From: Mobula birostris
Taxonomy: Eukaryota
Assembly: GCF_030028105.1 (NCBI RefSeq)
Contig: NC_092382.1
Coordinates: 59,347,764 to 59,411,763 of the forward strand
Length of the DNA stretch: 64,000 nt
Reading direction: 5' to 3'
The notes under the pieces were generated by a model, which did no database searches, had not been told where the DNA came from, and saw only the letters and a list, made by a program, of their open reading frames with translations. Of this stretch, positions 3,112-49,130 are shown one piece after another (the stretch's first letter is position 1; each line of letters begins with the position of its first letter). Made by a program: the position numbers and the translations under genes.

Positions 3112-3204
3112 ATCCAGCATCTGTACCAACTCGACAGGCAGAGGGGACAACACCTGAGCCAAGTGATGATTTGTCCCCGATCACAGACCCAGACACAAGC
3201 TCAG
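3112..3204 (+). pseudogene. Repeat exon copy 1, donor lost (GT>AT)
   Basis: ttacag|ATCCAGCATCTG...ACAAGCTCAG|atatca; 93 bp; DPASVPTRQAEGTTPEPSDDLSPITDPDTSS. Confidence 0.75.
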
Positions 3205-3854
3205 ATATCACTTGTGGAGATGTGTGTTTTACACAGACTTCCCGCTGAAATTATCAATGAAGGGATTCAATCAGAACACAGGGACTGACTGAGTTGTGTG
3301 ATGGAGTGGCTGAGGGAGATGGTTGACAGAGTGGGCGAGGGGAATGTGTGCTGAAATGGCTGAGTATGAGTGGTGTCGGAGGGTCAAATGGTGTTTGAAG
3401 AGACAGAGAGGGAAGGGTTGATAAGGGTGTGACCAATTGGAATGAACGCATATGTCAGTATTTCCAGCCTTGGGATTCAACTAGAATCCGGTGGCTGATT
3501 GAGAGGATATTGGTGATGGAATGACTGAAGGGGTGGGTGATGGAGAGACAAAGGTGGGTGGGTGACTGATGGCGGGGGTGGTGGAGTGACTGAGGGGTGT
3601 GGGTGACAAAGTAAACGAGTGAGATGGGTGACAGATGGTCCGAGGACAGAGGTGACTGGGATGGCAGCAAGGGTGTGGAGGAGATTTGGGAAAGTATTGA
3701 GGGAGCAAGTAAAACAGTGTTGCGTGGTGGGTCTAACCAATGGCAATGGACAAAAGTATGTAGGTTTTCAATGAGCACTGGGGGTGTCGGATGCCACTGG
3801 GCCCGGTACATGGGTGAGCAGGATGTCCAGAATGTTGTACTTTCCGATAAACGT

Positions 3855-4728
3855 TGTTACGTACCCCGTAACTGGGTTGCCAAACCAGCAGAAATGGATC
3901 ACTCAGTTGGAGTCTGGATTACTAGAACTAAGAAAGTTTTATTAAAGAAACAAGCAACACAGTACTCTAATCAAAACGATAATAAATGCAACAGTTCAGC
4001 AATGATAAACATACATGTACACAGAATTAAGATAACAGGATCAATCAAGCTCTATCGTTGTCTAGGGGTAAATGACCAGTTTCAAAGTGACGCAAAGTTC
4101 AGTTCAATTTAGTTCAGTTCAGTTCGCAGTAATCGCTGCCATGGGAGATGGACAGTGGGGGGGAAGGAGAGAGAGAGCAAAACGAATGAATATTCAAGGT
4201 TTCCAGACAGACCTTCATAGTCAGCTTTCGGGCGAGTCCTTTGTGATGTCATCTGAGGTCACCGACCGTGACCCCTCGGTTTCCAGATACGATCGTTTCT
4301 CTGCGGTGAACCTGGCACCCAGGCAAGGGTGGACACACATCAGGTTCCCGCCGATCGTGCCTTTCCACCCTGAGCGTCTATGGCTTGATCCCGTGACCAG
4401 CCGTCCAAAAACTTCCCACCGGTTTGTGAGAGACGCACCGCTTCCAGGGTCTTGTTACCTCGGGGTGTCGTGTGTGTGTCGCCTTAGCGAACCTGTCCCT
4501 TTTTATCCCCCTGCTGGGGTATCGCCTGTCCATCACTTCAAACAGTTCAGGGTTCAAAGGGGGAGCCGATCTTGACAGTTCTCCTTCCCCTTCATTAACA
4601 TCTCCAAATGCTGCTCCATTGTTTTCCTTATCTCTCTCTCTCCTGAAGACAGGTGGCAGACCGACTGCTGATCCCACTGGTGCCAGCACAGGACAGATAC
4701 ATCTTAATCTATGTGTATTCTTGTCACA
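3855..4728 (-). mobile_element. Solo LTR (874 bp), 4-bp TSD ACGT
   Basis: TGTTACG...TGTCACA termini with ACGT on both sides (3851-3854, 4729-4732). It interrupts the array unit at 'gataaacgt^gaagtgaa'. TTTATT near 3938 suggests minus orientation. Confidence 0.85.
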
Positions 4729-5327
4729 ACGTGAAGTGAAATTATAGAGTTACCATAGCACAGAGGCCTAGATATGAGTATCCCTGGGTGTTCTGTCCTC
4801 GAGAACTGTTCTGAGTGACTGACGTACAGGCAACGAGTGACACAGAGTGGGTATGGAGGAATATTGACAAAGAGCGTTATCACCATCACTTGGACAGATG
4901 GAAGTGAATTGTTTGGATTGACTTAGGACAGCTGAGCGGACCTCTCATTGGAGGAGCAAGTCCCTGTAGTGGAGCTTTGACTTTCTGTGTTACCAGAACT
5001 AGAGAGAAACCTCTTGGGAAACTGCAACGTCTGAATGAGTTTGGTCATCTGGACTAGATAGTGTACCCCCAGAGTTCTGGAAGAGGAGACTGAAGAGATT
5101 GTGGAATTATTTATAATGATCTTTCAAGATTCATTAGAATTTGGAATGTTTCTGAAAGACTGGAAAATTACAAATGTCACTCCACACCTCAAGAAGGTAG
5201 AGAGATAGAAGGAAGGAAACTAAAGGCCAGTTTTTCCAGCCACAGTGGTAGCGAAGATGTTGGAGGTCCAAATGGGTGGTCAATTGTCTGTTCCTATGTT
5301 CCCACTATGTACCCCTGTTTATTGCAT

Positions 5328-5413
5328 ATCCAACATCTGTACCAACTCCTCAAACTGAGTGGATAACTCTTAAACCAAGTGACAATTTGTCCATGATCAT
5401 GACACAAGCTCAG
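5328..5413 (+). pseudogene. Repeat exon copy 2, acceptor lost (AG>AT) plus 7-bp deletion
   Basis: ttgcat|ATCCAACATCTG...ACAAGCTCAG|gtataa; 86 bp instead of 93. Confidence 0.75.
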
Positions 5414-5845
5414 GTATAAGTTGTGGGGATCTGTTTTACATAGAATCCCCTTTGACATTATCGTCCAATGGTTTCAACGAGAATTCAGGATTGAGGGAAG
5501 ATGGGTGACTGAACAGCCGAGGGAGTCAGGAAATCGACACGAACATGTTGGTTTCCCGTGAGGAGTGGGGCTGGGGGAGGCCACTGGGCCTGGTACGTGC
5601 GTAAGCGGGAAGAAGGTCATGAATTCAGACGAACATAAAGTATTTGGGGATAATTGAGCGACCGTAGCAGATAGGGTCAATTCTGAATATCGTTGGTTGT
5701 TCCATCCTTGAGAATTATAGTGAGGTGGCTAATGTACAGGCAAAGAGTGACTCAGAGTGGGAAGAGAGAAATTGTCAAAAATTGTCAACATATTTTGGAA
5801 ACTTGGAAGTTGGGATGTCTTAGGACAACGGAGCAGACATTGGAG

Positions 5846-8443: not shown

Positions 8444-9083
8444 GGAATGCAGTGATTCATGGTTGGATGAGTTCTGTTTAAGTTTCCATGACTGCTGTGG
8501 TGGGCATTCGCTTGTGAGATGGAAGGAAGGTTTCGGTGATTCCTGTCATCTCTCCTATCACAAACAGCTCAATACTTTCTCTCCTAAACTCATAAAGTGT
8601 CCCTGATTTAAAACAGATTCACGGTCGCTTGGGTGCAGTAGGGTTCAGGGCAGGTTTTTGTCATCAAACCCATAAATAACTACAGGTACATCTGTCAGTG
8701 TTAGGCATTGTAGAAATCAATCCTCATAGAAGTTTCTAGGGTGGAGCTTCGACCAGTCTGTGTTACCAGAACTAGATAGAGAAGATTTTTGGGAAACTGA
8801 AAGGTCTGAATGTAAATGAAACATCTGAATGAAATGGTGTAGCCCCCAGAGATCTGGAAGAGGAGGCTGAAGAGATTGTGGAGGCATTTGTAATGATTTT
8901 TCAAGAATCCCTAGATTCTGGAATGGTTCTGGAAGACTGGATGATTAGGAAGGGTGTGAGGAAGAAGGAAGGAAACTATCGGCCAGTTATTCTGATCTCA
9001 GTGGTTGGAAAGATGTTGGAGTCCCATATGGATGGCCAATTGTCTGTTCCTCTGTTCCCACCATGTACCCCTTTATATTACGG

Positions 9084-9176
9084 ATGCAGCATCAGAACCA
9101 ACTCCGCAACCTGAGGAGACAACCCATGAGACAAGCGATGATTTGTCCACAATCACAGACCCAGACACAAGCTCAG
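9084..9176 (+). pseudogene. Repeat exon copy 3, acceptor lost (AG>GG)
   Basis: ttacgg|ATGCAGCATCAG...ACAAGCTCAG|gtatca; 93 bp. Confidence 0.7.
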
Positions 9177-10497
9177 GTATCAGTTGCAGGGATGTGTTTT
9201 ACACAGCCTCATCCCTGAGACTGACATTGAAGGGATTCTACCAGAATCAAGAGACTGACTGAGGGGTGATGGGTGACAGAGTGACTGAGGGAGATGGGTG
9301 ATAGAGTGACTGAGGAGATGGGTGACAGAGTGACTAGGAAGATTAGTGCAAGAGTCACAGAGGGAGAAGGGCGACGAGTGACCAAGAGAGATGGGCAACC
9401 AAGTTACCGAGGGAGATGGGCGACGGAGTGACTGAGGGGAGAGGGGTGAGGAAACAATTAAGCGTGTAACATAACAAGTCTGACCAATTGGAATGGACAC
9501 AAATATCTAGGTATTCTGAGCTTTGGGTTTGGCGGAGACCACTGGGCCTGGTACATGGGTGAGCGGGACATGAACAAAATACCATACCTTCGTATAAACA
9601 TGAAGTGAAATGAATGTACAGATGCAGAGGATTATCTTACATAGCACAGAGGGTCAGATATGAGTATCCCTGGATGTGGCATCCTCAAGAATTGTTCTGA
9701 ATAACAGACGTACAGGCAAGGAGTGACTCAGAGTGGGTATGGAGGGAAATTGTCCAAGAGAGTTCTAGCCATCACTTGGAAAGACGAAAATGATTTGTGT
9801 GGGACGACTTAGGACAGCTGAGTGAATCTCTCATTGGAGCAGCATGTGGAGTACAGTGACTGGTGTTTGGGTGAGTGGTGTATAACCTTACATTGTGGCT
9901 ATGATTGACATTTGCTGGTGCGACGGAAAGTGGGCTTTGATTCCTGTAATCTCTACTATCACAAGTGAGCTCAATATTTCCTCTCCTGCACACACCATGA
10001 ATCCCTGATATAAAACAGGTTTAAGGTCTTTTGGAAACAATGGGGTATAGAACTGGTCTTTCTCACAATCCCATAACCATTTACAAGCACATTTGTCAGC
10101 GTAGGGTTTGTAGAAATGGAGCCTGGTAAGTCTCTATGGTGGTACTTTGAATGCCTGTGTTACCATAACTGGAGAGAAGCTTATTGGGAAACTGAAAGGT
10201 CTGAATGTAGATAAGTCACCTAAACTAGATAGTGTTCCCCCAGAGTTCAGGAAGAGTTGCTGAAGAGATTGTGGAGGTATTTGGAATGATCTTTCAAGAA
10301 TCATTAGTTTATGTAATGGTTCCAGAAGACTGGAAAATTACAAATGCCACGCCACTCTTCAAGAAGGTAGAGACGTAGAAGAAAGGAAACTATAGGCCAC
10401 TTAGTCTAACCTCAGCCGTTGGAAAGAATTTGGAGTTCCAATAGGGTGGTCAATTGTCTGTTCCTCGGTCCCCAGCACGTACCCCTGTTTATTACAG

Positions 10498-10590
10498 ATC
10501 CAACATCTACAACAACTACACAAACTGAGGGGACAAGTCCTGAGCCAAGCGATGATTTGTCCACCATCACGGACCCAGGTACAAGCTCAG
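10498..10590 (+). CDS. Mucin-like repeat exon copy 4 (DPTSTTTTQTEGTSPEPSDDLSTITDPGTSS)
   Basis: Pyrimidine tract, ttacag|...|gtatca, 93 bp, phase 1-1, open. Confidence 0.75.
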
Positions 10591-12746: not shown

Positions 12747-12839
12747 ATCCATCATCTGTACCAACTCCACAAACCGAGGGGACAACTGCTGAGCCAAGTG
12801 ATGATTTGTCCACAATCACGGACCAGGGTACAAGCTCAG
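12747..12839 (+). CDS. Mucin-like repeat exon copy 5 (DPSSVPTPQTEGTTAEPSDDLSTITDQGTSS)
   Basis: tttcag|...|gtatca, 93 bp, open. Confidence 0.75.
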
Positions 12840-13700: not shown

Positions 13701-14854
13701 TGTGATGAAGATGCTGAGGACAGAGTTGTGAGGGAAGGCCGAGACTGTGTGGGAGTGATCGAGGGAGAGTGGAGTGGAATCAAGTGAAAGAGTGTTGCGT
13801 GACGGGTCTGACCAATTGGGATGGACACAGATATCTAGGTATCTCGAGCAGTGAGTGTTCAGGAGGCCACTGCGACTGGTATGTGGAAATGCGGGATGAA
13901 CAGAAGGTCATGCGTTTTGATAAAGATGAACTGAAATAAATGTACAGATGCTGGGATAATTAAGTGACGTAGCATACCGGGTCAGATCCTAGTAGCCCTG
14001 GATATTACAGCTTAGAGAATTGTTCTGGAGTGTCTGACGTACAAGGAAGGATCGACTCAGAGTGGAGGGAATTGAGGGAATTGACTCAGAGTGGATGGAA
14101 TGGAGGGAATTGTCAAAGATCCATCTGGTAGAATGATGGAGGTGTTTTGTTATGGACAACTTAGTCTGCTGAATGGACCTCTCATGCGAGGAGGATGTGG
14201 ATTGCAGTGACTGGTGTTTGAGTGAGTACTGTATAACCTTACATTGTGGAGAATGATGGGCCTGTGATGGCATGATGGAATGCTAATTTTGGTGATTCCT
14301 GTAGGTCGTCCCATCACAAACTTACTCAATATTTCCTCTCCAAACTCACCATGTGTTCCTGATATAAAACACATTCAGCGTCTCTTTGGAACAGTCAGGT
14401 ACAGAGAATGTCTTTGTCCACAATCCCATAACCATCTACAAGCACACTGTCAGTGGTAGGAGTGTTAGAAATTGAGGCTGTCCCATGTCTCTGTGATGGA
14501 AATTTGAATATTTGTGTTTCCATAACAAGAGAAGAGTTGCTTGGGAAACAGAAAGGTCTGAATGTAGATAGATCACCTGGACCAGACCCAGAGTTCTGGA
14601 AGAGGTGGCTGAAGAGACTGTAGAGGGATTAGTCATGATCTTTCAAGAATCACTAGATTCTCTAGATTCTACATGTTTCTGAAAGACAAGAAAATTACAG
14701 ATGTCACTCCACTCTTGAAGAAGATAGCGAAGCAGAAAGGAGGAAACTATAGGCCTGTTATTCCAATCTCAGTGGTAGGAAAGATGTTGGAGTCCCAAAC
14801 CAGTGGTCTATTGTCTGTTCCTTTGTACTCACCATGTGCCCTTGTTTATTTCAG

Positions 14855-14947
14855 ATCCATCATCTGTACCAACTCCACAAACCGAGAGGACAACTGCTGA
14901 GCCAAGTAATGATTTGTCCACAATCACAGACCAAGATACAAGCTCAG
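14855..14947 (+). CDS. Mucin-like repeat exon copy 6 (DPSSVPTPQTERTTAEPSNDLSTITDQDTSS)
   Basis: tttcag|...|gtatca, 93 bp, open. Confidence 0.75.
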
Positions 14948-16076
14948 GTATCAGTTGTGGGGACATGTTGTACACTGACTGCTCTCTGAAATTATCATCC
15001 AATGGATTCAACCAGAATCAAGGGACTGACTGAGCAGAGATGGGTGACGAAGCAGCCGAGGGGGAAAGACGACAGACGGACCAAGGACAGATGGGTGTGG
15101 GATGGCTCAAATGGTGAGGGAGAGACTGAGGGGAGCGTGTAGAGGGAGGAAATAAAAGTGCTGCATGATGGGTCTGACCAGTCGGGATGGGCTTGGGGTT
15201 TGCTGTGAGCAATGGGGATTGTGTTCACTGTGCCTAGCACCTGAGTGAGTGGGATGAGTGACTGTAACATACAGAGTCAAATCTCACTATCCCTGGGTGT
15301 TTCATAACCATGAATTGTTCTTGAGTGTATGATGTATTGGCAAGGATTGACAGTGTGGGAACAATTGAAAAAAGGGTTCTAGCCATCTGTTCGAAAGATG
15401 AAGGTGATTTGTTTGGGATAACTTGGGATCGCTCATGGCAGGAGGATACAAAATTCTGAGCCTGGTGGTTGGGTGAGTCGTTACATTTTCGGGTGTGATG
15501 TGCCTTTGTTGGTATGTTGGAAGTCTGGTTGTGGTGATTGCTGTAGGCTCGTCCCATCACAAGTTAGCACAGTACATCCTCTCCAACACATATTCATTGT
15601 CTCTTGGGAATATTAGGGTACAGATTTATGACTTTGTCCACAATCGCATAACCATCTACAAGTGCATTGTCAGTGGTAGGCGTGGTAGAAATCGATTTTA
15701 TTGCAAATCACAATGGTGGAGCTTTGACAAAAACTGTGTTACCATAATGAGAGAGGAGGTTCTTGGGAAACTGAAATGTCTGAATGTAGATGAAACATTT
15801 GAACAAGATGGTGTACCCCCAGGGTTCTGGAAGAGGAGGCTGAAGAGATTGTGGAAGGATTGGTAATGATATTTCAAGAATCACTAGATTCTGGATTGGT
15901 TCCGGATGACTGCAGAATTACAAATGTAACTCCACTCTTCAAGAAGGTAGAGGGATAGAAGGAAGGGTACTACAGGCCAGTTGTTCCGGCCTCAGTGACT
16001 GGGAGATGTTGGAGTCCCAACGCGGTGGGCAATTGTCTGTTCCTCTATTCGCACTATGTGCCTCTGTTTATTACAG

Positions 16077-16169
16077 ATTCAGCATCTGTACCAACTCCGC
16101 AACGCAAGGGGACAACTCCCGAGCCAAGCGATGATTTGTCCACAATCAATGACCCAGATACAAGCTCAG
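16077..16169 (+). CDS. Mucin-like repeat exon copy 7 (DSASVPTPQRKGTTPEPSDDLSTINDPDTSS)
   Basis: ttacag|...|gtatca, 93 bp, open. Confidence 0.75.
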
Positions 16170-17496
16170 GTATCAGTTGTGGGGATGTGTTTTACACAGA
16201 CGCCTCTCTGCAATTAACATTCAACAGTAATGGAGGGCTCGAGGGAGATGGTTGATAGAGTGACAGAGTGGGCTGGGTGACGGAGTGGCAGAGGGAGATG
16301 TGTGTCAAGGTGACCCAGAGAGGTGGGTGACGGAGTGGGCAACGGGTACGGGTGACGGAGTGGGCGAGGGTTATGGGTGACGGAGTGGCTGAGGGTTATG
16401 GGTGACGGAGTGGCCGAGAGAGATGGTTGTAAGGGTTATTTAAGCAGGTGAGTGAACGAGTGGCTGAGGGAGATAGGTGATGAGGGTGCTGATGACAGAG
16501 GAGTGTGGGAAGGCTGAGCAGGTGTGGGAGTGACTGAGGAGAGAGTGGTGAGGAAACAAGTAAAGAGTTTTACATGATGGGTCTGAACAATTGGACTGGA
16601 AACAAATATCTAGGTATTCTGAGCATTGAGTGTTGGAGAGGCCACTGGGACTGGTACATGGAACTACGGGATGTACAGAAGTTCATGCTTTGTGATAAAC
16701 ATAAAGTGAGATGAATGTACAGATGCTGGGGATAGTTGAGTGATCGTAGCATGCAGGGTCAGATTTCAGTATCCCTGGATGTTACATCCTAGAGAATTGT
16801 TCTGTAGTGTCTGACGTACAGGCAAGGATTGACTCAGATTGGGAAAAGAGCGAGTTGCCTAAAGGCCATCTAGTGGAAAGCGGGAGGTGGTTTGCTATGG
16901 ATGACTTAGTTTAGCTGACCAGACCTCTCCTGTGAGGAAGATGTATATTGCAGTGACCGGTGGTTGGGTGAGTGCTGTATAAACTCACATAGTGGAGCAC
17001 GATGGGCCTGTGATGGTATGACGGAAGGCTGGCTGTGGTGATTCCTGTATCTGGTCCATCACAAGCTCGCCCAGTAAATCTTCTCCAACACACACCATGT
17101 GTCCCTGATTTGAAACACATTCAGGGACTCTTTGGAGCAGTAGGGTACACAACACGACCTTGTCCACAATCCCAGAAACATCCACGAGCACGTTTGTCAG
17201 TGGTAGGGGTGATAGAAATAGAGCCTCCTGCAAAACACAATGATGGAACTTCGACTGGACTGTGTTACCATAACTAGAGAAGAGATTCTTGGGAAGCTGA
17301 AAGGTCTGAATGTAGATGAGACATCTGAATGAGATCATGTATTCCCAGAGTTCTGGAAGAGCAGGCTGATGAGTGTGTGGAAGGATTGGTAATGATCTTT
17401 CAAGAATCACGAGATTCTGGATTGGTTCCGGATGACGGCAAAATTACAAATGTAACTCCACTCTTCAAGAAGGTAGAGGGGCAGAAGGAAGGATAC

Positions 17497-17742: not shown

Positions 17743-17835
17743 ATCCAACATCTGTACCAACTCCACAAACTGAGGGGACAAGTCCTGATCCAAGCGATGA
17801 TTACTCCACAATCACGGACCCAGATACAAGCTCAG
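17743..17835 (+). CDS. Mucin-like repeat exon copy 8 (DPTSVPTPQTEGTSPDPSDDYSTITDPDTSS)
   Basis: ttacag|...|gtatca, 93 bp, open. Confidence 0.75.
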
Positions 17836-18119
17836 GTATCAATTATGGGGATGTGTTTTACAGTGACTCCTCTCTGCAATTAACATTCGATGGATAGAAC
17901 CAGCATCAAGCAGCTGACTGAGGGATGATGGGAGATGGAGGGCCCGAAGGAGATCGGTGCGAGTGCCAGATGGGGATGGGTGATGGATTAGCTGAAGGAG
18001 ATATGTGTCAGCATGACCAAGAGAGGTGGGTGACTGGGTGGTCGAGGGAGATGTGTGCCGGAGTGGATGAGAGAGATGGGTGTCAGGCTTATCCAGAGAG
18101 GTTGGTGATGGAATGGACG

Positions 18120-20030
18120 AGGGAGATGTGTGTCAGGGTGACTGAAGGAGGTGGATGAATGAGTTGCCGAGGGAGATGGATGTCAGGGTTACTGAAGGAG
18201 GTGGGTGAATGAGTTGCTGATGGAGATGGGTGTCAGAGTTACTGAAGGAGGTGGGTGAACGAGATGCTGATGGAGATGGGTGTCAGGGTGACTGAAGGAG
18301 GTGGATGAATGAGTTGTTGACGGAGATGGGTGTCAGGGTTACTGAAGGAGGTGGGAGAATGAGTTGCTGAGGGAGATGGGTGTCAGGGTTACTGAAGGAG
18401 GTGGGTGAACGAGATGTTGATGGAGATGGGTGTCAGGGTGACTGAAGGAGGTGGATGAATGAGTTGCCGAGGGAGATGGATGTCAGGGTTACTGAAGGAG
18501 GTGGGTGAATGAGTTGCTGATGGAGATGGGTGTCAGAGTTACTGAAGGAGGTGGGTGAACGAGATACTGATGGAGATGGGTGTCAGGGTGACTGAAGGAG
18601 GTGGATGAATGAGTTGCTGACGGAGATGGGTGTCAGGGTTACTGAAGGAGGTGGGAGAATGAGTTGCTGAGGGAGATGGGTGTCAGGGTTACTGAAGGAG
18701 GTGGGTGAACGAGTTGCTGAGGGAGATGGGTATCAGGGTTACTGAAGGAGGTGGGTGAACGAGATGCTGAGGGAGATGGGTATCAGGGTTACTGAAGGAG
18801 GTGGGTGAACGAGACGCTGAGGGAGATGTGTGTCAGGGTTACTGAAGGAGATGGGTGAATGAGTTGCTGAGGGAGATGTGTGTCAGGGTGACCGAAGGAG
18901 GTGGATGAATGAGTTGCTGAGGGAGATGGGTGTCAGGGTTACTGAAGGAGGTGGATGAATGAGTTGCTGAGGTAGATGGGTATCAGGGTTACTGAAAGAG
19001 GTGGGGGAATGAGTTGCCGAGGGAGATGGGTGTCAGGGTTACTGAAGGAGGTGGGGGAATGAGTTGCCGAGGGAGATGGGTGTCAGGGTTACTGAAGGAG
19101 GTGGGTGAATAAGTTGCTGAGGGAGATAGGTGTCAGGGTTACTGAAGGAGGTGGGTGAACGAGATGCTGAGGGAGATGTGTGTCAGGGTTACTGAAGGAG
19201 GTAGGTGAATGAGTTGCTGAGGGAGATGGGTGTCAGGGTTACTGAAGGAGGTGGGTGAATGAGTTGCTGAGGGAGATGGGTGTCAGGGTTACTGAAGGAG
19301 GTGGGTGAATGAGTTGCTGAGGGAGATGGGTGTCAGGGTTACTGAAGGAGGTGGGGGAATGATTTGCTGAGGGAGATGAGTGTCAGGGTTACTGAAGGAG
19401 GTGGGTGACGGAGTGGCCGAGGGAGATGGATGTCAGGGTTACTGAAGGAGGTGGGTTAACGAGATGCTGAGGGAGATGGGTATCAGGGTTACTGAAAGAG
19501 GTGGGGGAATGAGTTGCCGAGGGAGATGGGTGTCAGGGTTACTGAAGGAGGTGGGGGAATGAGTTGCCGAGGGAGATGGGTGTCAGGGTTACTGAAGGAG
19601 GTGGGTGAATAAGTTGCTGAGGGAGATAGGTGTCAGGGTTACTGAAGGAGGTGGGTGAACGAGATGCTGAGGGAGATGTGTGTCAGGGTTACTGAAGGAG
19701 GTAGGTGAATGAGTTGCTGAGGGAGATGTGTGTCAGGGTTACTGAAGGAGGTGGGTGAACGAGATGTTGATGGAGATGGGTGTCAGGGTTACTGAAGGAG
19801 GTGGGTGAATGAGTTGCTGAGGGAGATGGGTGTCAGGGTTACTGAAGGAGGTGGGTGAATGAGTTGCTGAGGGAGATGGGTGTCAGGGTTACTGAAGGAG
19901 GTGGGGGAATGATTTGCTGAGGGAGATGAGTGTCAGGGTTACTGAAGGAGGTGGGTGACGGAGTGGCCGAGGGAGATGGATGTCAGGGTTACTGAAGGAG
20001 GTGGGTTAACAAGATGCTGAGGGAGATAGG
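18120..20030 (+). repeat. 50-bp G-rich minisatellite, ~38 copies
   Basis: Exact 50-bp period of actgaaggag gtgggtgaat gagttgctga gggagatggg tgtcagggtt with point variants. Confidence 0.97.
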
Positions 20031-21140
20031 TGATGGAGATGCTGAAGACAGAGTTGTGAGGGAATGCCGAGAATGTGTGGGAGTGACCGAGGGAGAGTGG
20101 AGTGGAATCAAGTGAAAGAGTGTTGCGTGACGGGTCTGACCAATTGAATGGATATAAATATCTAGGTATTCCGAGCAGTGGGTGTTCAGGAGGCCACTGC
20201 GACTGGTATGTGGAACTGCGGGGTGAAAAGAAGGTCATGTGTTTTGATAAACATGAACTGAAATGAATGCACAGATGCTGGGATAATTAAGTGACCGTAG
20301 CATACAGGGTCAGATCCCAGTATCCCTGGATATTACAGCTTAGAGAATTGTTCTGGAGTGTCTGACGTACAACGGAGGATTGACTCAGACTAGGAATGCA
20401 GGGAATTTTCAAAGATCCGTCTGATAGAAGGATGGAGGTGTTTTGTTATGGACGACTTAGTCAGCTGAATGGACCTCTCATGCGAGGAAGATGTGGATTG
20501 CAGTGACTGGTGTTTGAGTGAGTATGTATAACCTTACATTGTGGAGAATGATGGGCCTGTGATGGCATGATGGAATGCTAATTTTGGTGATTCCTGTAGG
20601 TCGTCCCATCACAAACTTACTCAATATTTCTTCTCCAAACTCATCATGTGTTCCTGATATAAAACACATTCAGCGTCTCTTCGGAACAGTCAGGTACAGA
20701 GAATGTCTTTGTCCACAATCCCATAACCATCTACAAGCACACTGTCAGTGGTAGGGGTAGTAGAAGTTGAGGCTGTCCCATGTCTCTGTGGTGGAAATTT
20801 GAATATTTGTGTTTCCATAACAAGAGAGGAGTTGCTTGGGAAACAGAAAGTTCTGAATGTAGATAGATCACCTGGACCAGACCCAGAGTTCTGGAAGAGG
20901 TGGCTGAAGAGACTGTAGAGGGATTAGTCATGATCTTTCAAGAATCACTAGATTCTACATGTTTCTGAAAGACAAGAAAATTACAGATGTCACTCCACTC
21001 TTGAAGAAGATAGCGAAGCAGTAAGAAGGAAACTATAGGCCTGTTATTCCAATCTCAGTGGTAGGAAAGATGTTGGAGTCCCAAACCAGTGGTCTATTGT
21101 CTGTTCCTTTGTACTCACCATGTGCCCTTGTTTATTTCAG

Positions 21141-21233
21141 ATCCATCATCTGTACCAACTCCACAAACCGAGAGGACAACTACTGAGCCAAGTAATGATT
21201 TGTCCACAATCACAGATCAAGATACAAGCTCAG
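21141..21233 (+). CDS. Mucin-like repeat exon copy 9 (DPSSVPTPQTERTTTEPSNDLSTITDQDTSS)
   Basis: tttcag|...|gtatca, 93 bp, open; near-identical to copy 6. Confidence 0.75.
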
Positions 21234-22365: not shown

Positions 22366-22458
22366 ATTCAGCATCTGTACCAACTCCGCAACACAAGGGG
22401 ACAACTCCCGAGCCAAGCGATGATTTGTCCACAATCAATGACCCAGAAACAAGCTCAG
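22366..22458 (+). CDS. Mucin-like repeat exon copy 10 (DSASVPTPQHKGTTPEPSDDLSTINDPETSS)
   Basis: ttacag|...|gtatca, 93 bp, open; near-identical to copy 7. Confidence 0.75.
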
Positions 22459-23829: not shown

Positions 23830-23922
23830 ATTCAGCATCTGTACCAACTCCACAAACTGAGTGGACAACTCCTGAGCCAAGTGATGATTACTCCACAATC
23901 AAGGACCCAGATACAAGCTCAG
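23830..23922 (+). CDS. Mucin-like repeat exon copy 11 (DSASVPTPQTEWTTPEPSDDYSTIKDPDTSS)
   Basis: ttacag|...|gtatga, 93 bp, open. A 41-bp duplication follows and creates a second donor at 23963. Confidence 0.7.
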
Positions 23923-25333
23923 GTATGATTACTCCACAATCAAGGGCCCAGATACAAGCTCAGGTATCAGTTGTGGGGATGTGTTTTACAGTGACTCCTC
24001 TCTGCAATTAACATTCGATGGATAGAACCAGCATCAAGTGGCTGACTGAGGGATGATGGGAGATGGAGGGCCCGAAGGAGATCTTTGCAAGTGGCAGAGG
24101 GGGGTGGGTGATGGATTAGCTGAAGGAGATGTGTGTCAGGGTTACTGAGAGAGGTGGGTGACGGAGTGGCTGAGGGAGATGGATGTCAGGGTTACTGAAG
24201 GAGGTGGGTGAACGAGTTGCTGAGGGAGATAGGTGATGGAGATGCTGAGGACAGAGGGGTTTGGGAAGGCCGAGAATGTGTGGGAGTGACCGAGGGAGAG
24301 TGGAGTGGAATCAAGTGAAAGAGTGTTGCGTAACGGGTCTGACCAATTGGAATGGACACAAATATCTAGGTATTCTGAGCAGTGGGTGTTCAGGAGGCCA
24401 CTGGGACTGGTATGTGGAACTGTGGGATGAACAGAAGGTCATGCTTTGTGATAAACATGAACTGAAATGAATGTACAGATGCTGGGATAATTAAGTCACC
24501 GTAGCATACAGGGTCAGATCCCAGTATCCCTGGATATTACAGCTTAGAGAATTGTTCTGGAGTGTCTGCCGTACAAGGAATGATTGATTCAGAGTGGGAA
24601 TGCAGGGAATTGTCAAAGATACATCCGGTAGAAGGATGGAGGTGTTTTGTTATGGACGACTTAGCTGAGTGGACCTCTCATGCGAGGAGGATGTGGTTTG
24701 CAGTGACTGATGTTTGAGTGAGTACTGTATAACCTTACATTGTGGAGACTGATGGGCCTGTGATGGCATGATGGAATGCTGATTTTGTTGATTCCTGTAG
24801 GTTTTCCCATCACAAATCTACTCACTACTTCCTCTCCAAAAGTGTTCCTGATATAAAACACATTCAGCGTCTCTTGGGAACGGTAGGGTACAGAGAATGT
24901 CTTCGTCCACAATCCCATAACCACCTACAAGCACACTGTCAGTGGTAGGGGTGGTAGAAGTTGAGGCTGTCCCATGTCTCTGTGATGGAAATTTGAATGT
25001 TTGTGTTTCCATAACAAGAGAGGGGGTGCTTGTGTAACAGAAAGGTCTGAATGTAGATGGATCACCTGGACCAGACCCAGAGTTCTGGAAGAGGTGGCTG
25101 AGGAGATTGTAGAGGGATTAGTCTTGATCTTTCAAGAATCACTTGATTCTACATGTTTCTGAAAGACAAGAAAATTACAGATGTCACTCCACTCTTGAAG
25201 AAGGTAGCGAAGCAGGAAGAAGGAAACAATAGGCCTGTTATTCTAATCTCAGTGGTAGGGAAAATGTTGGAGTCCAAACCGGCGGTCTATTGTCTGTTCC
25301 ATTGTTCCCACCATTTACCCCTGTTTATTACAG

Positions 25334-25426
25334 ATCCAACAGCTGTACCAACTCCACAAACCGAGGGGACAAGTCCTGAGCCAAGTGATGATTTGTCCAC
25401 AATCATGGACCAGGATACAAGCTCAG
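25334..25426 (+). CDS. Mucin-like repeat exon copy 12 (DPTAVPTPQTEGTSPEPSDDLSTIMDQDTSS)
   Basis: ttacag|...|gtatca, 93 bp, open. Confidence 0.75.
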
Positions 25427-26716: not shown

Positions 26717-26809
26717 ATCCAGCCTCTGAACCAACTCCACAAACTGAGGGGACAACTCCTGAGCTAAGCGATGATTTGTCCACAATCAAGGACCCAGATA
26801 CAAGCTCAG
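26717..26809 (+). CDS. Mucin-like repeat exon copy 13 (DPASEPTPQTEGTTPELSDDLSTIKDPDTSS)
   Basis: ttgcag|...|gtatca, 93 bp, open. Confidence 0.75.
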
Positions 26810-29200: not shown

Positions 29201-29559
29201 CTTATTTTATGTTATTCATTTATTTAGTGATACTGAGAGGAGGAAGCCCTTTCAGCACTTTGAGCCATGATGTCCCAGCCAACACCGACAAACCTGATTA
29301 TTCCTAAACTAATCATGGGACAATTTACAATGGCCAATTATCCTAAACGGCATGTCTTTTGACTGTGGAATGAATCCTGTGCACCCAGGGAAAACCCACG
29401 CATTTCACAGAGAGGACACAAAAACTCCTTACAGAATGGCACCAGGGTTGATCTCCAAACTCCAGAATGTTCCGTGCTGTAATATTGTAGAGCTCACCAC
29501 TACGCTACTGTGACGCCCATCTCTGTAGTAAATGGACATTCCTCAAGTCAGATGTTTAA

Positions 29560-31000: not shown

Positions 31001-31765
31001 GATATCTTTGACTCTTAACATCTTAAGCTTAAGTTCTGCAATCAACTACATGATTTCAAACAACTCAGAACCTTAGCCTCTGCCTGTTGAGTCAAAGCCT
31101 GACCATTCTTACTCCAACAATGGCTGCTCTGCTTATACTTCGTTTCTTTTTGTTGACCCTTGAAAAGTCACCAACAATCCAGGTGATTTTCTGCTCAACA
31201 CACATGTCCTATCAGGTCTCGGTCACATTTAAAAGCTGGTGCATAAAGTCTACAAGGAACCAGCTCCAACTCTCTCAGTGACTTTCTGCTCGTAGGCATG
31301 TCCTGACTTGCCCCTTTTGCTTTTTAAACCTGGCACGTGAAATCCACAAAAAAAAACTCAGATTCACTCTGTGATCTCCCACTCAGCAGATATAAGTAGG
31401 AAGAATAATAGTTACGCCTGGAGGAGAAGAATAAGGAAAGTGAGATGGGACCCATGCCAAGATGCAGGGTGAAGAAAACAGGAGTAAAAGAAAGGACTAG
31501 GTCTGGGATTGCCCATGTGCACAGTGATGTCCTCAGGCTCAGGAGTGATCAGTGAGGATTACTGCAAGGAAATGTGGCTCCCACATTTCTTCCCTGAAAT
31601 TCATCCCCGCCCAGAAGGAGGGTAATATCAATTGTTTGTGTGGGAAAGATGGTGAAGGTAAGAGGGATAAAATGAAGCCAGTTCTCTGCTCCACAAGCAT
31701 CTCTCCCAGCCCAATGACTATTCTCAAAGTCCTCACCCACAACTCTCTCTGTTGTTTTATTCCAG

Positions 31766-31861
31766 ATCCCCAGATATCCACAAGTGAAGAAGCTGGAAAA
31801 TCATCAACTGGAGGACACAACCAGGAACCATCATCTGTCCCAATGGGAGATACATCGACAG
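31766..31861 (+). CDS. Divergent Ser/Thr-rich exon (DPQISTSEEAGKSSTGGHNQEPSSVPMGDTST), phase 1-1
   Basis: 'ctctctctgttgttttattccag|ATCCCC...TCGACAG|gtacc'; 96 bp; same DP start and phase as the repeat exons. Confidence 0.7.
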
Positions 31862-31959
31862 GTACCAAATCCTGTGTCTGTGGGGTTCAATCAGTCTCTC
31901 CCATTCTCTCACCAAGAATGTCTCATGGGTTAATTCACCTGCTGGACATCCAGTGTAGT

Positions 31960-32542
31960 GCACAGTATTGCCAAAAGTTTGAAGCCCTGTATCTCAGGAA
32001 AAAAATGTTGTTATTGGAGAGAGTCCAGAGGACTCTACACAGGACCCTGCTCTGTAGGGTCCAGAGGGTGACTCTAGGAATGAAGGGATTGATATATAAG
32101 GAGCATCTGGCATCTTTTGGCCTTTGGTACTCACTGGAATTTGGAAGAATGCAGAGGGATCTAATTAAAACCTACCCATTGTTGAAAGGACTAGTAAAGA
32201 TGTATGTGGAGAGGATGTTTCCTATGGCAGCGGTGTCCAGAACTAGAAGGCATAACCTCAAAAGTGAGGGGCAACCCTTAAATAGAGCAGAGGTAAGGAG
32301 ACATTTTTTTAGCCAGAGGGTAGTGAATCTGTGTGGTGCTGCTCTGCCATAGACTGCTGTGTAGGCCAAGACCATGGGGATACTTAAGTGAAAATTGATA
32401 GTTTCCTCATCAGTAAGGGCAGCAAAGATTATAGCGAGAAGGCAGCTGTACAGGGTTGAGTGGGATCTAGGATCAGCAATGATGGAATAGCAGAGCAGAT
32501 TCAAAGGGGTGAATGGCCTAATTCTGTTCCTGTGTCTTATGG
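31960..32542 (+). mobile_element. Decayed CR1 3' end
   Basis: LERVQR...SLEFGRMQRDLIKTY...FFSQRVVNL in ORF 31552-32352; 3' end 'gaatggcctaattctgttcctgtgtcttatggtc'. Confidence 0.85.
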
Positions 32543-33586
32543 TCGAATTGTAGAGGTGAATGACATCAGGTTTTCATTTCCCTCCTTGGCCACATTTCAT
32601 CATTGTCTGAGATCAGTCAAAGCAATGGTCTGGACTTCCTGGAGGTTCATTCTGTTTCATGCTGAAAGCAGTGACAGTTGTTTAGGAGAGCAATCTGGTC
32701 GTGCAAGAGTAAATGCCATAGAGTCTTAAAGATTTCACCGCAGTTGGAAAGCATGCATTCCCCCAACTCCTATCTCACCCTGAGGCTATATTTTAGTGAT
32801 TGTAGTCTGTCGAACTGTTATGTTCCTTTTTTATTTTATTGTCTACATCTGCTGACTTCCAAAGGTAAAGGACACAGTGTGTCAACAACTACAGGACCCA
32901 TCTAAGAAACATCCTCTTCCCAAGGGAAAGAAACTTGCTCAGGTATTGTGTGTGTGCATGTGTCTGTGTGTGTCTGTCAGGGTGGCGGGGGGTTAATGCA
33001 AGTTGGTTTGCTGGAGGGCCCTCAGTCAGATTTGGTGCCCAGTGACATCATGTGTAATCTACCCACAGGATGCAGGAAGAAATACCATATTTGCACATTG
33101 TTGGAGGAACTTCTCTGAAACTATGTTATTCCTTGTGTAAATATCACAGCATACACTCCGCTTATATTTTCTCAGCCCATAGCTCCTATTCTGCACCCTC
33201 ACTCTTGTTCTTTGATGGTCTCTATATCTTCTTGCTGTATACCCCACACCTCATTCCAAACGCTTCCCATTGCACCAGACTGCCTTTTTGTGGCAGTCCG
33301 TACATCTTATTTGTGAAGATCAGTTAATCCCATTAGTTGTATCCAAAATTAGACTCAAATGAGACCCCTCCCTGTCACCTGCCTTTACCCCTTCTCATCC
33401 ATCCCCGTCCATTCAACCTTCTTGCCCTGCTGAGCCTCCTTTACATTTCAGTGCAGATCATGATGTGCTGCATTCTCTGGCAATGTGATTTCCAATCCCA
33501 CCTTCACAATCCCCCATACTTTGGGTGTCGCTGCCTCTGGGTCAGGCCAGGTGGAAATGTAACTCAAAACTGCGTTAATCTTCCAG

Positions 33587-33693
33587 TCAATGGACTCCCA
33601 ACAAAGGAGGAGTGTGAAAAGATGATTAACACGGCCCTAGTATTATATGTTGGACAGAACAACCTGGAAAACTCCAAGGAGTATCTCCATCAG
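33587..33693 (+). CDS. Candidate exon (V)NGLPTKEECEKMINTALVLYVGQNNLENSKEYLHQ, phase 1-0
   Basis: 'ttaatcttccag|TCAATG...CATCAG|gtgaga'; 107 bp; in frame with the 31766 exon. Confidence 0.6.
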
Positions 33694-34849
33694 GTGAGAG
33701 GTTTATTCCACATTTATTCTGGTTTGAAGATTCTGACTAATGTAGCTGTGGTTGTAGCTCCCCATCCCAGTGAGCCTGAATTTTCCCCTCCCATTCCCAG
33801 TGACCACCGTTTCTCATTGAATGGTGGATATCCATCCTCTGTGAGGAACAGTTGCTGCTCCCAGTTTGCCATTTGTAACTAACATTGTTTCCCAACCGCA
33901 ATCAAAGTTACTTAAACTCTCCATCAACACAGATTGAATGTCTCACCTTTTCATAGTTTGAATTTCCCCCATCAGCCTTACTCCTTCACTCCCAGATACC
34001 ACTGAGATTTCTGTTGTAGGGGTTCAGTGCAATCATATTTGGGTGTTGATTTGGACATGCGTCTCTGCCAAGTGAGGTGTTAGGGTGCTTCTTTTCTCTG
34101 GTGGCCTGCAGGCCACCCTCGGATAAACCCACAGATTAAGGTCACATGAAACCATGGGTGCAAGCGGTGAATGGTTGTATGAACAGTTGGTGCAGATCAC
34201 AAATCCTGATCATGCAACCCCAGGCAGACAAGATCTGAAGTTCATTGATACTGCCCAGAAGAAGGCAGTAACAAAGCACTTCTGTAGAATAAGATGGTAT
34301 TGCTTCACTGGTGGGAGGTGGGGGCTGGGGGTGATGTTTTTGCTAAAGCAGGTAGGGGGAGTGGGTGAGAGTACTGTTGATGGTTTTGCTGATGTTTATA
34401 CATGGGAGGGTGAGGAGGGTTTTGGGGTTTAAAATTTTCTGTCTGTCTTTGTGTTTTTTTCTGTTTTTTGAATGACTGTGGGGAGTAAGACTTTCAGGTT
34501 GCATAGATCATCACATACTGAACTATTACACAATCATGATCATGAACTGGCATGATGATGATGGTGAGTGGAATCATCTCAATAAAGAGCTCCCATTTTT
34601 TTAAGATAAGAATTCTCAACATTAATCGAGGAATCAATGGACCACAGGTTGAGGACACTTGAGCTAGACTGAGGGAGGTGAAAAGTATTCCCTGGTTTCT
34701 TTGGTTGGAGGCAGCATTCCATCTGAGGAAGAAGGGGCTAGGGTTTGAATATGAGGACTGAAATAGAAATTTTCTTCTGTCCAGTTAAAGGACAATGTAA
34801 TCCTTATTTAAGAGGAAGGCATTACCCCTAATATGGAGCAGAGACTGCC

Positions 34850-35290
34850 ACGCTTTTGGAGGAGGGGAAATCTCCTGCATGTGTCCAGCGTGGGGCCTTC
34901 AATGTTTTGGAAGAAGAGATGCCGGGGTGTGACAGGAAAAATCATTCTCCTGGTGATTTCCATGGAGATTTCCATAAATCCTCAGCAAAGGGTGTCCTTT
35001 AGTGGGAAGGAATTTCCTCTGGTAGGGGTAGATTTGTATATTGATTGACGAGGAATGTGAACAGTCCAATTCAGAAGGAATGGATTTCTGCCAGGGTACA
35101 GTGAATGTGGATTTCCCCTGCTAGGGGTAGATTTGTATATTGATTGATGAGGAATGTGATCAGTCCGATTCAGAAGGAGTGGATTCCTGCCAGGGTACAG
35201 TGGATATGGTTCCTGGTGTGAAGAGGAAGCAATCTCCTGATGTTCGGTGACAGAGTCTGTGGGTGATGGGGGGGAGGTGTGAGGGGTGTC
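34850..35290 (-). mobile_element. Ancient Penelope-like RT remnant with an internal 99-bp tandem duplication
   Basis: Minus-strand DSVTEHQEIASS resembles the Penelope RT N-terminal region. Similar to 37040-37400. 'aggggtagatttgtatattgattga' occurs at 35024 and 35123. Confidence 0.4.
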
Positions 35291-35370
35291 TCTGAGTCAT
35301 CATCCCCACATAGTGCTGTCTAACTCTGTTTCTTCATCTGTTCCTCACCATCGACTGCCCTCGTCAATAG

Positions 35371-35442
35371 GTTAGATGCCGAGAGAGTAGGTCTGTCTTG
35401 TCCAAGTGCAAAGGTTACACAGAACAGAAGGAAAAGAATTGA
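35371..35442 (+). CDS. Candidate terminal exon VRCRESRSVLSKCKGYTEQKEKN*
   Basis: ctaac branch-like site (~35320), long pyrimidine tract, 'tcaatag|GTTAGA'; phase 0 matches the previous exon; TGA at 35440-35442. Confidence 0.5.
   Translation, partial: VRCRESRSVLSKCKGYTEQKEKN

Positions 35443-49127: not shown

Positions 49128-49130
<3 letters not shown>

What the first reader, a model, noticed from the sequence alone, without database searches (positions are those of the whole stretch)
3112..35442. Hidden gene: an acidic mucin-like stalk built from 13 tandemly duplicated 93-bp exons
Seen: what looks like a TE-derived satellite holds one 93-bp cassette per unit, with a pyrimidine tract plus AG before and GTAT after, in symmetric phase 1. 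Ten consecutive copies (10498-26809) have no indel or stop, while the surrounding unit sequence has many indels. Spliced, they give ~310 aa of a 31-aa repeat, D[PS]xSVPTPQTEGTTPEPSDDLSTIxDxDTSS. This continues in frame into exons at 31766, 33587 and 35371. Inference: a secreted, O-glycosylated, acidic protein whose stalk grows by whole exon-plus-intron duplication rather than by a VNTR inside one exon. Symmetric exons would also allow length tuning by exon skipping. Repeat masking would hide it. The signal-peptide exon(s) would lie upstream of the window.
Basis: partly seen in the sequence, partly recalled or inferred. Interest (0 to 1): 0.85.

Follow-up and report, generated by a model that had tools for sequence, protein, structure and literature searches.

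The report
Ray glycoprotein stalk of repeated exons
This stretch is the rear part of a ray gene for a secreted, uromodulin-like glycoprotein whose acidic, sugar-bearing stalk is encoded by a row of near-identical 93-base exons; related rays, skates and sharks already carry predicted genes of this kind, so it is real but a fairly ordinary member of an unstudied family.

Summary
There are 13 copies of a 93-bp cassette on the + strand. The ten from 10498 to 26809 have AG/GT borders, no indel and no stop, and sit in phase 1-1. The first three are dead: donor GT>AT; acceptor AG>AT plus a 7-nt deletion; acceptor AG>GG.

A profile of the cassette peptides hit only six proteins among 1.84 billion, all NCBI models from rays and skates. 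These models carry 2-5 uromodulin/GP2-type D8C domains, then the 31-aa repeats, then a short cysteine tail.

- The tail maps to window exons 31766-31861, 32865-32942, 33587-33693 and 37451-37513.

Contigs of run X1 join cassettes exactly at the predicted GT..AG borders. They come from a 90-99% similar locus, so expression of this very locus is not shown.

Verdict: these are real exons and a new member of an annotated but undescribed elasmobranch family. The locus may be partly decaying.

The parts
231..3111 (+). Remainder of one more array unit. Positions 231-685 and 2245-3111 match unit-internal intron sequence. Positions 734-2227 are an inverted insertion also present in unit 5328-9083. This implies a further cassette, or the preceding exon, just upstream of the window.
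   Evidence: blastn of 1-3111 against six units
3112..3204 (+). Cassette 1: 93 nt, open, acceptor AG intact, donor GT>AT. Probably skipped.
5328..5413 (+). Cassette 2: acceptor AG>AT and a 7-nt deletion (86 nt, frame-breaking). Dead.
9084..9176 (+). Cassette 3: 93 nt, open, acceptor AG>GG, donor intact. Dead or skipped.
10498..10590 (+). Cassette 4: intact phase 1-1 exon
12747..12839 (+). Cassette 5: intact
14855..14947 (+). Cassette 6: intact. Twin of 21141 (29 of 30 residues).
16077..16169 (+). Cassette 7: intact. Twin of 22366 (28 of 30 residues).
17743..17835 (+). Cassette 8: intact
21141..21233 (+). Cassette 9: intact. An X1 contig reaches its acceptor carrying the tail of another cassette.
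22366..22458 (+). Cassette 10: intact. An X1 joint runs 22458|26717 (depth 13.9).
23830..23922 (+). Cassette 11: intact. An X1 contig continues past 23922 with the start of a cassette, so the first donor is used.
23923..23963 (+). 41-nt tandem duplication of the cassette tail plus donor, giving a second donor that would break the frame.
25334..25426 (+). Cassette 12: intact. An X1 joint runs 25426|26717, GT..AG, depth 369.
26717..26809 (+). Cassette 13: intact, last of the array
10169..10438 (+). Sense-strand retroelement (LINE reverse-transcriptase-like) fragment about 60-330 nt upstream of the cassette. One lies in every unit, e.g. also at 22039-22306 and 26404-26657.
   Evidence: Translations and coordinates. 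High-depth contigs over these parts in all 4 runs. Atlas look-alikes named RNA-directed DNA polymerase score only 0.87-0.88. Pfam found nothing. The LINE motif itself is recalled.
18061..20032 (+). Largest block of the G-rich 25/50-nt minisatellite that begins about 80 nt after every cassette donor. Others lie at 3512-3607, 9252-9449, 10673-10804, 13159-13704, 16241-16426, 24090-24250, 25515-25609 and 26899-26973.
   Evidence: Tandem Repeats Finder. GGG counts are 16-28 in the first 400 nt of each intron against 2-7 in the last 400 nt.
14000..17493 (+). Source or copy of a two-cassette block duplication. Its partner is 20328-23720, at 93.6% identity over 3497 columns.
31766..31861 (+). 96-nt exon, phase 1-1: the second repeat type (DPQISTSEE...). 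It is 70% identical to P0012 residues 629-661.
32865..32942 (+). 78-nt exon, phase 1-1, AG/GT borders. It is homologous to P0012 658-686 and P0005 390-414, but has an in-frame TAA at 32903-32905 where those two have Q.
33587..33693 (+). 107-nt exon (VNGLPTKEECEKMINT...) ending in phase 0. It is 56-63% identical to P0005, P0012 and P0016.
34897..35477 (+). Decayed duplicate (65-69% identity, 29 gap positions over the coding part) of 37047-37584.
37451..37513 (+). True terminal coding exon (IREMLIEQTPCKYFLSKCRR, then stop), with acceptor cag. It is 76% identical to the end of P0012. AATAAA/ATTAAA signals lie at 37741 and 37905.

Best explanation
Positions 3112-37513 are the rear part of a gene from an elasmobranch family of secreted glycoproteins.

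By homology, the exons upstream of the window encode a signal peptide and several uromodulin/GP2-type D8C (D10C) domains. Within the window:
- Each 93-bp cassette is a phase 1-1 coding exon for one 31-residue acidic, Ser/Thr/Pro-rich repeat.
- Together the repeats form a mucin-like spacer between the D8C heads and a short cysteine-containing tail.
- The tail is encoded at 31766, 32865, 33587 and 37451.

The array grew, and still changes, by unequal exchange between 1.2-1.5 kb exon-plus-intron units. Each unit carries the same retroelement fragment and a G-rich minisatellite.

Because every cassette is symmetric, loss of a splice site removes one repeat without breaking the frame. This has happened to three cassettes here. 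Skipping at the RNA level has the same effect.

Shown: the anatomy, the homology, and splicing of this cassette type in a close relative's RNA-like contigs.

Inferred: O-glycosylation, secretion, a pathogen-decoy role like GP2, UMOD and the fish omcins, and whether this particular copy still makes protein.
For: - Ten intact cassettes with AG/GT borders in phase 1-1.
- The cassette is the least diverged part of the unit: 0.41 against 0.67 minimum changes per site, and no indel against 21 gap intervals in intron -450..-51.
- A profile of 12 cassette peptides found 6 proteins at E<=1e-3 in 1.84e9, the best at 3.7e-107. All are ray or skate NCBI models.
- Pfam D8C_UMOD is present in 4 of 5 models tested, and in 3 of 3 further ones.
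- The third D8C of P0012 matches GP2 structure 7p6r at E 5.7e-26.
- The tail exons of P0005, P0012 and P0016 map in order to 31766, 32865, 33587 and 37451.
- The tails of models P0001 and P0002 are translations of the intron that follows a cassette, e.g. P0002 600-659 against 12743-12922 at 78%. P0014 ends in a similar stretch by my reading of its letters; I did not align it to the window.
- Skate isoform X4 ends a D8C exon at ...VYCT and resumes at DPASV. Isoform X3 lacks exactly one 28-aa repeat.
- X1 contigs join 25426|26717 (GT..AG, depth 369) and 22458|26717. They carry cassette sequence directly across the borders at 21141, 23922, 26717 and 26809.
Against: - dN/dS among the cassettes is about 0.87, so there is no visible constraint on the residues.
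- Three cassettes lack a splice site.
- The 78-nt exon carries an in-frame TAA.
- No D8C exon lies in the window, so linkage to D8C domains is by homology only.
- X1 is only guessed to be RNA. Just 5 of its 345 laid contigs are >=99% alike. After 26809 its contig continues into another cassette instead of the 31766 exon, so it stems from a related locus.
- The X1 joints rest on one contig each, with 29 letters on the short side.
- Runs X2-X4 show only the retroelement parts.
Confidence: 0.8

Rival explanations
1. The locus is a decaying paralogue, i.e. a pseudogene or one on the way. The cassettes were exons, but this copy no longer yields a complete protein. What looks like conservation is recent duplication and gene conversion.
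For: - In-frame TAA in the 78-nt exon.
- Three dead cassettes at the 5' side.
- A frame-breaking second donor after 23922.
- A decayed duplicate of the last exon.
- dN/dS about 0.87.
- The family is large and many copies lie on small scaffolds.
- No run holds this locus at high identity as RNA.
Against: - All defective exons are symmetric (93 or 78 nt, phase 1-1), so skipping them keeps the frame.
- Model P0016 of Hypanus sabinus lacks the 78-nt exon altogether.
- Ten consecutive cassettes, the 96-nt and 107-nt exons and the terminal exon with its stop are all intact.
- The cassette evolves more slowly than its introns.
Confidence: 0.3
2. The array is a non-coding, retroelement-derived macrosatellite. 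The open frame and the AG/GT borders are chance survivals.
For: - Every unit holds a retroelement fragment and a minisatellite.
- Stops are rare by composition: 6 of 270 substitutions.
- dN/dS is near 1.
Against: - The same 31-aa repeat sits in frame behind D8C domains in NCBI models of at least five ray and skate species.
- Cassettes 3 and 4 resemble repeats 3 and 4 of P0001 and P0002.
- X1 contigs lack the intron exactly between GT and AG.
- The exon is the slowest-evolving part of the unit.
Confidence: 0.02
3. The cassettes are mainly alternative exons. Individual transcripts carry varying subsets, so stalk length is set at splicing rather than by the genome.
For: - The donors are weak (CAG|GTATCA) in every cassette.
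- X1 has a minor joint 22458|26717 that skips two cassettes, at depth 13.9 against 369 for the neighbour joint.
- Skate isoform X3 lacks one repeat.
Against: - The skipping contig also holds unspliced upstream intron and is only 92.5% alike, so it may reflect a relative's different cassette order.
- Contigs cannot give isoform proportions.
- The NCBI models P0001 and P0012 include 9 and 6 consecutive repeats.
Confidence: 0.3

Closest known systems
Elasmobranch multi-D8C 'uncharacterized protein' models. Examples: Hemitrygon akajei XP_072893130, XP_072894514, XP_072894523; Mobula hypostoma LOC134341447; Hypanus sabinus LOC132401290; Rhinoraja longicauda LOC144611043.
   Same: - The same 31-aa acidic repeat: up to 26 of 30 residues per cassette and profile E down to 3.7e-107.
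- The same second repeat type and the same tail exons, in the same order.
- The same intron sequence after the cassette.
   Different: - The window holds more consecutive repeats of one type (10-13) than any model seen (at most 9).
- Its first three cassettes are dead, whereas the matching repeats 1-3 are included in P0001 and P0002.
- Its 78-nt exon has a stop.
- The D8C part is outside the window.
- None of the 89 listed relatives was marked as the window's own protein.
Uromodulin (UMOD) and glycoprotein 2 (GP2)
   Same: - The relatives' heads are D8C/D10C domains: Pfam PF23283, GP2 7p6r at E 5.7e-26, UMOD 6tqk at 3.5e-22.
- The sequon at GP2 N65 aligns with NHT in P0012. [quoted passage not shown]
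- The ...YCTDP(S/A)SV end of the domain is shared.
   Different: - Pfam detects no EGF or zona pellucida module in the seven models that carry D8C, so filament formation of the UMOD kind is not expected.
- The UMOD N275 sequon is absent at the aligned place; this is my reading together with the recalled UMOD sequence.
- UMOD and GP2 have no exon-array mucin stalk (recalled).
Teleost omcins (omc1-15; PMC11415648; abstract and sections 2.2 and 2.6 read)
   Same: - Several D10C domains in a row.
- Lineage-specific clustered gene expansion.
- A demonstrated role in resistance to bacterial infection, which is the best functional lead for this family.
   Different: - Omcins keep EGF IV, a ZP module and a predicted GPI anchor.
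- The paper calls the family teleost-specific.
- It describes no acidic repeat stalk.
DMBT1 / salivary agglutinin, LPA kringle IV-2 and titin PEVK (exon-unit arrays)
   Same: These work alike: tandem exon-plus-intron units with symmetric phases change protein length by copy number. DMBT1 is a secreted pathogen-binding glycoprotein with copy-number variation (abstracts seen in the listing). The exon structure of these three genes is recalled, not checked.
   Different: The domains are unrelated. Here the unit is a single 93-nt low-complexity exon with a retroelement fragment and a minisatellite in its intron. Copy-number variation between individuals was not tested.
Gel-forming and classical mucins
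   Same: Ser/Thr/Pro-rich tandem repeats, likely O-glycosylated. NCBI names some relatives 'mucin-5AC-like'.
   Different: - In classical mucins the repeats lie in one large exon (recalled).
- Pfam finds no VWD, CysD or SEA domain in the relatives.
- The strong acidity here, 65 D+E in 310 residues, is unusual for mucins (recalled).

Membership tests
Elasmobranch multi-D8C / 31-aa-repeat glycoprotein family (NCBI models, no published name) | 31-residue acidic repeat D-P-x-S-V-P-T-P-Q-x-x-G-T-T-P-E-P-S-D-D-L-S-T-I-x-D-x-D-T-S-S | tested here: met
   A profile of 12 window cassettes hits P0001-P0006 (E 3.7e-107 to 7.4e-4), with 2-9 matched stretches each. tblastn back to the window gives 60-87% per cassette.
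Elasmobranch multi-D8C / 31-aa-repeat glycoprotein family (NCBI models, no published name) | C-terminal exon set: second repeat type, short Cys exon, (V)xGLPTKEEC... exon, ...EQTPCKY... last exon | tested here: met
   All four map in order to 31766, 32865, 33587 and 37451, at 56-76% identity to P0005 and P0012. The Cys exon has an in-frame TAA.
Elasmobranch multi-D8C / 31-aa-repeat glycoprotein family (NCBI models, no published name) | Signal peptide and two or more D8C domains encoded upstream of the repeats | not testable with these tools
   tblastn of six family proteins finds no D8C in the window; the only hit is E 0.63 on the other strand.
UMOD/GP2 D8C (D10C) domain proteins, Pfam PF23283 | D8C_UMOD domain above Pfam's gathering score | tested here: inconclusive
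   Met in relatives: 53.8-147.5 bits against a cut-off of 27. Not testable for the window's own gene.
UMOD/GP2 proper (ZP-module filament formers) | EGF domain(s) and a zona pellucida module with a membrane anchor | tested here: not met
   Pfam lists no EGF or ZP family in the seven elasmobranch models that carry D8C. ZP (PF00100) appears only in the reptile uromodulins at the bottom of the hit list. The window's tail exons end in a short soluble-looking peptide.
Exon-unit tandem arrays (DMBT1 / LPA type) | Repeated exon-plus-intron unit, symmetric exon phase, evidence of recent unit duplication | tested here: met
   Thirteen units of 1.2-3.8 kb, phase 1-1, and a 3.5-kb block duplicate at 93.6%.
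Exon-unit tandem arrays (DMBT1 / LPA type) | Copy number differs between individuals or haplotypes | not tested
   No second assembly or DNA run of the species was laid on the locus.
Classical mucins | Ser/Thr/Pro-rich repeat domain within one large exon, flanked by VWD/CysD or SEA domains | tested here: not met
   Repeats are single 93-nt exons. No such Pfam domains occur in the relatives.

The most novel reading that the evidence does not exclude
Sharks and rays may have built their own large, fast-changing family of soluble multivalent GP2-type glycan decoys, with several D10C heads and no ZP filament module. The heads would be held on an acidic O-glycosylated stalk whose length is adjustable at two levels. 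In the genome, the G-rich minisatellite and the retroelement fragment in every intron would drive unequal exchange of exon units. In the RNA, weak GTATCA donors backed by the G-triplet-rich minisatellite would make each symmetric cassette individually skippable. Dead cassettes would drop out silently, so the gene tolerates mutations that would kill an ordinary gene.
Probability: 0.2. Interest if true: 0.6.

Novelty: new member of a known kind. Interest (0 to 1): 0.4.

Why it matters
The finding shows that a stretch which looks like retroelement-derived satellite holds real coding exons. It ties them to an elasmobranch-wide expansion of uromodulin/GP2-type D8C proteins: 85 of the 89 relatives found are shark, ray or skate models.

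I found no paper describing this family. The closest studied analogues are GP2, UMOD and the fish omcins, which defend mucosal surfaces against bacteria (PMC8930769, PMC11415648).

For annotation, the arrays matter because at least two NCBI models in a related species, and probably a third, stop inside them by reading into an intron. Repeat number is therefore probably under-called across these genomes.

As biology it is a clean example of a protein spacer that grows and shrinks by whole symmetric exons. That principle is already known from other genes.

Tried and rejected
- **Single tail exons against Pfam.** Three exons at E up to 10 gave nothing.
Not pursued to a fold. An Atlas look-up of P0012 residues 662-742 gave only noise-level hits of 0.81 and 0.77.
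Rejected as the terminal exon. It is a 65% identical duplicate with 29 gap positions, and relatives align to 37451 instead.
- **'No stop codons' as evidence for coding.** Rejected as weak: only 6 of 270 substitutions give a stop.
- **Apparent tblastn extensions of D8C ends into the 3' ends of the introns** (for example P0001 213-274 on 3051-3215). Judged to be carried by the adjoining repeat, and not followed up.
- **Cassette orthology.** A comparison with relatives' repeats is too short to resolve history. It suggests only that cassette 3 and the SAS...IN type predate the split from Hemitrygon.
- **Retroelement fragment.** Pfam gave nothing. The Atlas gave only lead-level reverse-transcriptase look-alikes.
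- **Species.** Two earlier notes call this genome giant manta ray. I did not test that, and run and organism names were coded.
- **Supplements.** Supplementary files of papers were not consulted. The supplements of PMC11415648 (omcin alignments) could bear on how close the fish family is.
- **Spliced model.** Protein searches used single exons, an alignment of single-exon translations, or database proteins. Stalk composition was summed cassette by cassette.

Full report
**What is in the sequence.** A blastn of the cassette at 10498-10590 against the window finds 13 full or near-full copies. All lie on the + strand, at 3112, 5328, 9084, 10498, 12747, 14855, 16077, 17743, 21141, 22366, 23830, 25334 and 26717. 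There is also a 39-nt partial copy at 23925-23963.

The ten copies from 10498 onward share these features:
- Each is exactly 93 nt.
- Each is preceded by a pyrimidine-rich tract and AG, and followed by GTATCA (GTATGA at 23830).
- Each is open in the frame in which two bases finish a codon and one base starts the next, i.e. phase 1-1.

The first three copies are defective:
- 3112 has donor AT instead of GT.
- 5328 has acceptor AT and a 7-nt deletion, leaving 86 nt.
- 9084 has acceptor GG.

After 23922 a 41-nt tandem duplication repeats the cassette tail and the donor.

**The unit.** Units are 1222-3756 nt long. Each has the following parts:
- A sense-strand fragment that translates like the start of a LINE reverse transcriptase lies about 60-330 nt upstream of the cassette. 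Pfam gave nothing for it. Atlas look-alikes were only lead-level. The motif itself is recalled.
- A G-rich 25/50-nt minisatellite starts about 80 nt after the donor. It runs from a few copies up to 2 kb.
- GGG counts are 16-28 in the first 400 nt of each intron, against 2-7 in the last 400 nt.

A two-cassette block, 14000-17493, recurs at 20328-23720 with 93.6% identity. Positions 231-685 and 2245-3111 are the rest of a further unit, so another cassette should lie just left of the window.

**Is it more than chance?**
- The cassette is the least diverged part of the unit. Mean pairwise difference is 0.11-0.13, against 0.17-0.25 in the introns.
- Minimum changes per site are 0.41 in the cassette against 0.67 in intron -450..-51.
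- There are 21 distinct gap intervals in that intron stretch and none within the 93 nt.

Against the reading:
- Only 6 of 270 single substitutions would create a stop, so the open frame alone says little.
- Variable sites are spread 11/8/12 over codon positions 1, 2 and 3, and dN/dS is about 0.87.
- So the constraint is on length, borders and nucleotide sequence or composition, not on particular residues. The 50 nt of intron next to each border are also conserved.

**What the cassettes belong to.** I aligned 12 single-cassette translations (A1) and searched the profile against 1.84 billion representatives. Six proteins reached E<=1e-3, five reached 1e-10 and three reached 1e-30. All six are NCBI models from rays and skates: Hemitrygon akajei (3), Mobula hypostoma, Rhinoraja longicauda and Amblyraja radiata. 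NCBI names them 'uncharacterized', 'cell surface glycoprotein 1-like' or 'proteoglycan 4-like'.

Their sequences show a hydrophobic leader, two to three repeats of a cysteine-rich domain, then the 31-aa repeats. Pfam calls the domain D8C_UMOD in 4 of 5 models tested, and in 3 of 3 further ones. The third domain of P0012 matches the GP2 decoy-module structure 7p6r (E 5.7e-26) and uromodulin 6tqk (3.5e-22).

A search with P0005 listed 89 relatives at E<=1e-5 among 5171 candidates. Of these, 85 come from 18 shark, ray and skate species and 4 from reptiles or a goby. None was marked as the window's own protein.

**The 3' end.** tblastn of six family proteins places their tails in order on the window:
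- 31766-31861: the second repeat type, 96 nt, phase 1-1.
- 32865-32942: 78 nt, phase 1-1.
- 33587-33693: 107 nt, ending in phase 0.
- 37451-37513: last coding exon, 76% identical to the end of P0012, followed directly by a stop.

The 78-nt exon carries TAA at 32903-32905, where P0012 and P0005 have glutamine. Because that exon is symmetric, skipping it keeps the frame. Model P0016 of Hypanus sabinus lacks it altogether.

That copy has 29 gap positions across the coding part, so it is a decayed duplicate. No D8C exon lies in the window.

**Evidence that each repeat is an exon in relatives.** The indirect evidence is:
- Models P0001 and P0002 end, after a repeat, in about 28 residues that are the translation of the window's intron start, up to the TGA at the head of the minisatellite. 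For example, P0002 600-659 aligns with 12743-12922 at 78%. P0014 ends in a similar stretch by my reading of its letters; I did not align it to the window.
- Among five Rhinoraja isoforms, X3 lacks exactly one 28-aa repeat. X4 lacks the stretch from GAHP... to ...VYCT and resumes at DPASV, which puts an exon border right before the first repeat.
- I have not seen what evidence NCBI used for these isoforms.

**RNA-type evidence.** A search for runs holding 28001-38000 listed four, all kept as Logan contigs and all only guessed to be RNA. X1 (organism A) held 0.11 of the words. X2-X4 (organism B) held 0.00-0.01 (one search was a one-base length slip).

I laid all four on 21000-26950 at 92% likeness. 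In X1:
- 24 of 30 bins are covered.
- One joint skips 25427-26716 (GT..AG, cut +3, depth 369, one contig, 29 letters on the short side).
- One joint skips 22459-26716 (GT..AG, depth 13.9).
- Loose ends put cassette sequence directly against the borders at 21141, 23922, 26717 and 26809.

Against over-reading this:
- Only 5 of 345 laid contigs are >=99% alike (148 at 95-99%, 192 at 90-95%).
- The intron pieces are 93-96% alike, at depth 5-16.
- After 26809 the contig continues into another cassette rather than the 31766 exon.
- So X1 samples a closely related locus or species, not demonstrably this one.
- X2-X4 cover 8 of 30 bins each, all on or beside the retroelement fragments.

**How it most likely works.** The ten intact cassettes add up to 310 residues: 125 Ser+Thr, 47 Pro, 65 Asp+Glu and 7 Lys+Arg (summed per cassette and never joined). 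That is the make-up of an extended, O-glycosylated, strongly acidic spacer. Glycosylation is inferred.

In GP2 and UMOD, the D10C decoy module presents a high-mannose N-glycan that captures the bacterial adhesin FimH (PMC8930769, passages read). The GP2 N65 sequon aligns with N-H-T in P0012. The same D-P-C-x-N-x-S/T pattern is visible in the other D8C repeats of the models (my reading). Zebrafish omcins carry five D10C domains plus EGF, ZP and a predicted GPI anchor, and protect against bacterial infection (PMC11415648, abstract and sections 2.2 and 2.6).

I therefore take the family to be secreted multivalent glycan decoys on a stalk, without the ZP polymerisation module. This function is inference.

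Growth of the stalk by unit duplication is shown. Removal of a repeat by splice-site loss without frame damage follows from the phases. A helper role of the G-rich minisatellite for the weak donors is a guess. It is based on the known stimulation of splicing by intronic hnRNP F/H sites (PMC1326234, title and abstract start in the listing only).

**Known or new.** Three searches found no paper on an elasmobranch D8C-repeat family: D8C/uromodulin/shark, uromodulin-like/elasmobranch/stingray/skate/mucus/D10C, and Hemitrygon/Mobula/uromodulin/GP2. The omcin paper calls its family teleost-specific.

The gene kind is, however, already predicted by NCBI in many relatives, and exon-unit arrays are known from other genes. 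DMBT1 copy-number variation was seen in the abstracts; the exon structures of DMBT1, LPA and titin PEVK are recalled. I therefore rate it a new member of a known kind, of moderate interest.

The scan's own index had no note with the words uromodulin or D8C. One note on this window (s1-894434) had flagged the C-terminus as decaying, which my stop codon and duplicate exon partly bear out. Two notes elsewhere in the genome call it giant manta ray, which I did not test.

Noticed in passing
window 47413-48372 (+): An intact single-exon ORF of 319 aa matches rhodopsin-family 7TM receptors (Pfam 7tm_1, E 8.2e-19). The N-terminal 131 residues of the chimeric Hemitrygon model P0002 align to 47920-48318 at 45%. 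So a receptor gene of this type also lies next to a D8C-repeat gene in that species.
   Followed up: partly
window 49067-49658: An (AG)30 run is followed by 15 near-perfect (99%) copies of a 33-nt unit.
   Followed up: no
window 734-2227 and 6961-8433: A roughly 1.5-kb element is present in opposite orientations in two array units (77% identity). It is presumably a transposon insertion that explains the long unit 5328-9083.
   Followed up: no
window 35012-35209: Two copies of a 99-nt unit (90% match) lie inside the decayed duplicate of the terminal-exon segment.
   Followed up: no
P0001, P0002, P0014 (NCBI models of Hemitrygon akajei and Mobula hypostoma): P0001 and P0002 end by reading about 28 codons into the intron after a repeat, and P0014 appears to by eye. 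P0002 is also fused to a receptor fragment. The arrays seem to be truncated or mis-joined in public annotation.
   Followed up: partly
window 45376-45927 (-): A 183-aa ORF gives a weak (E 0.63) tblastn match to the start of a D8C domain (…HRGWFRFQS…). I judged it to be chance.
   Followed up: no
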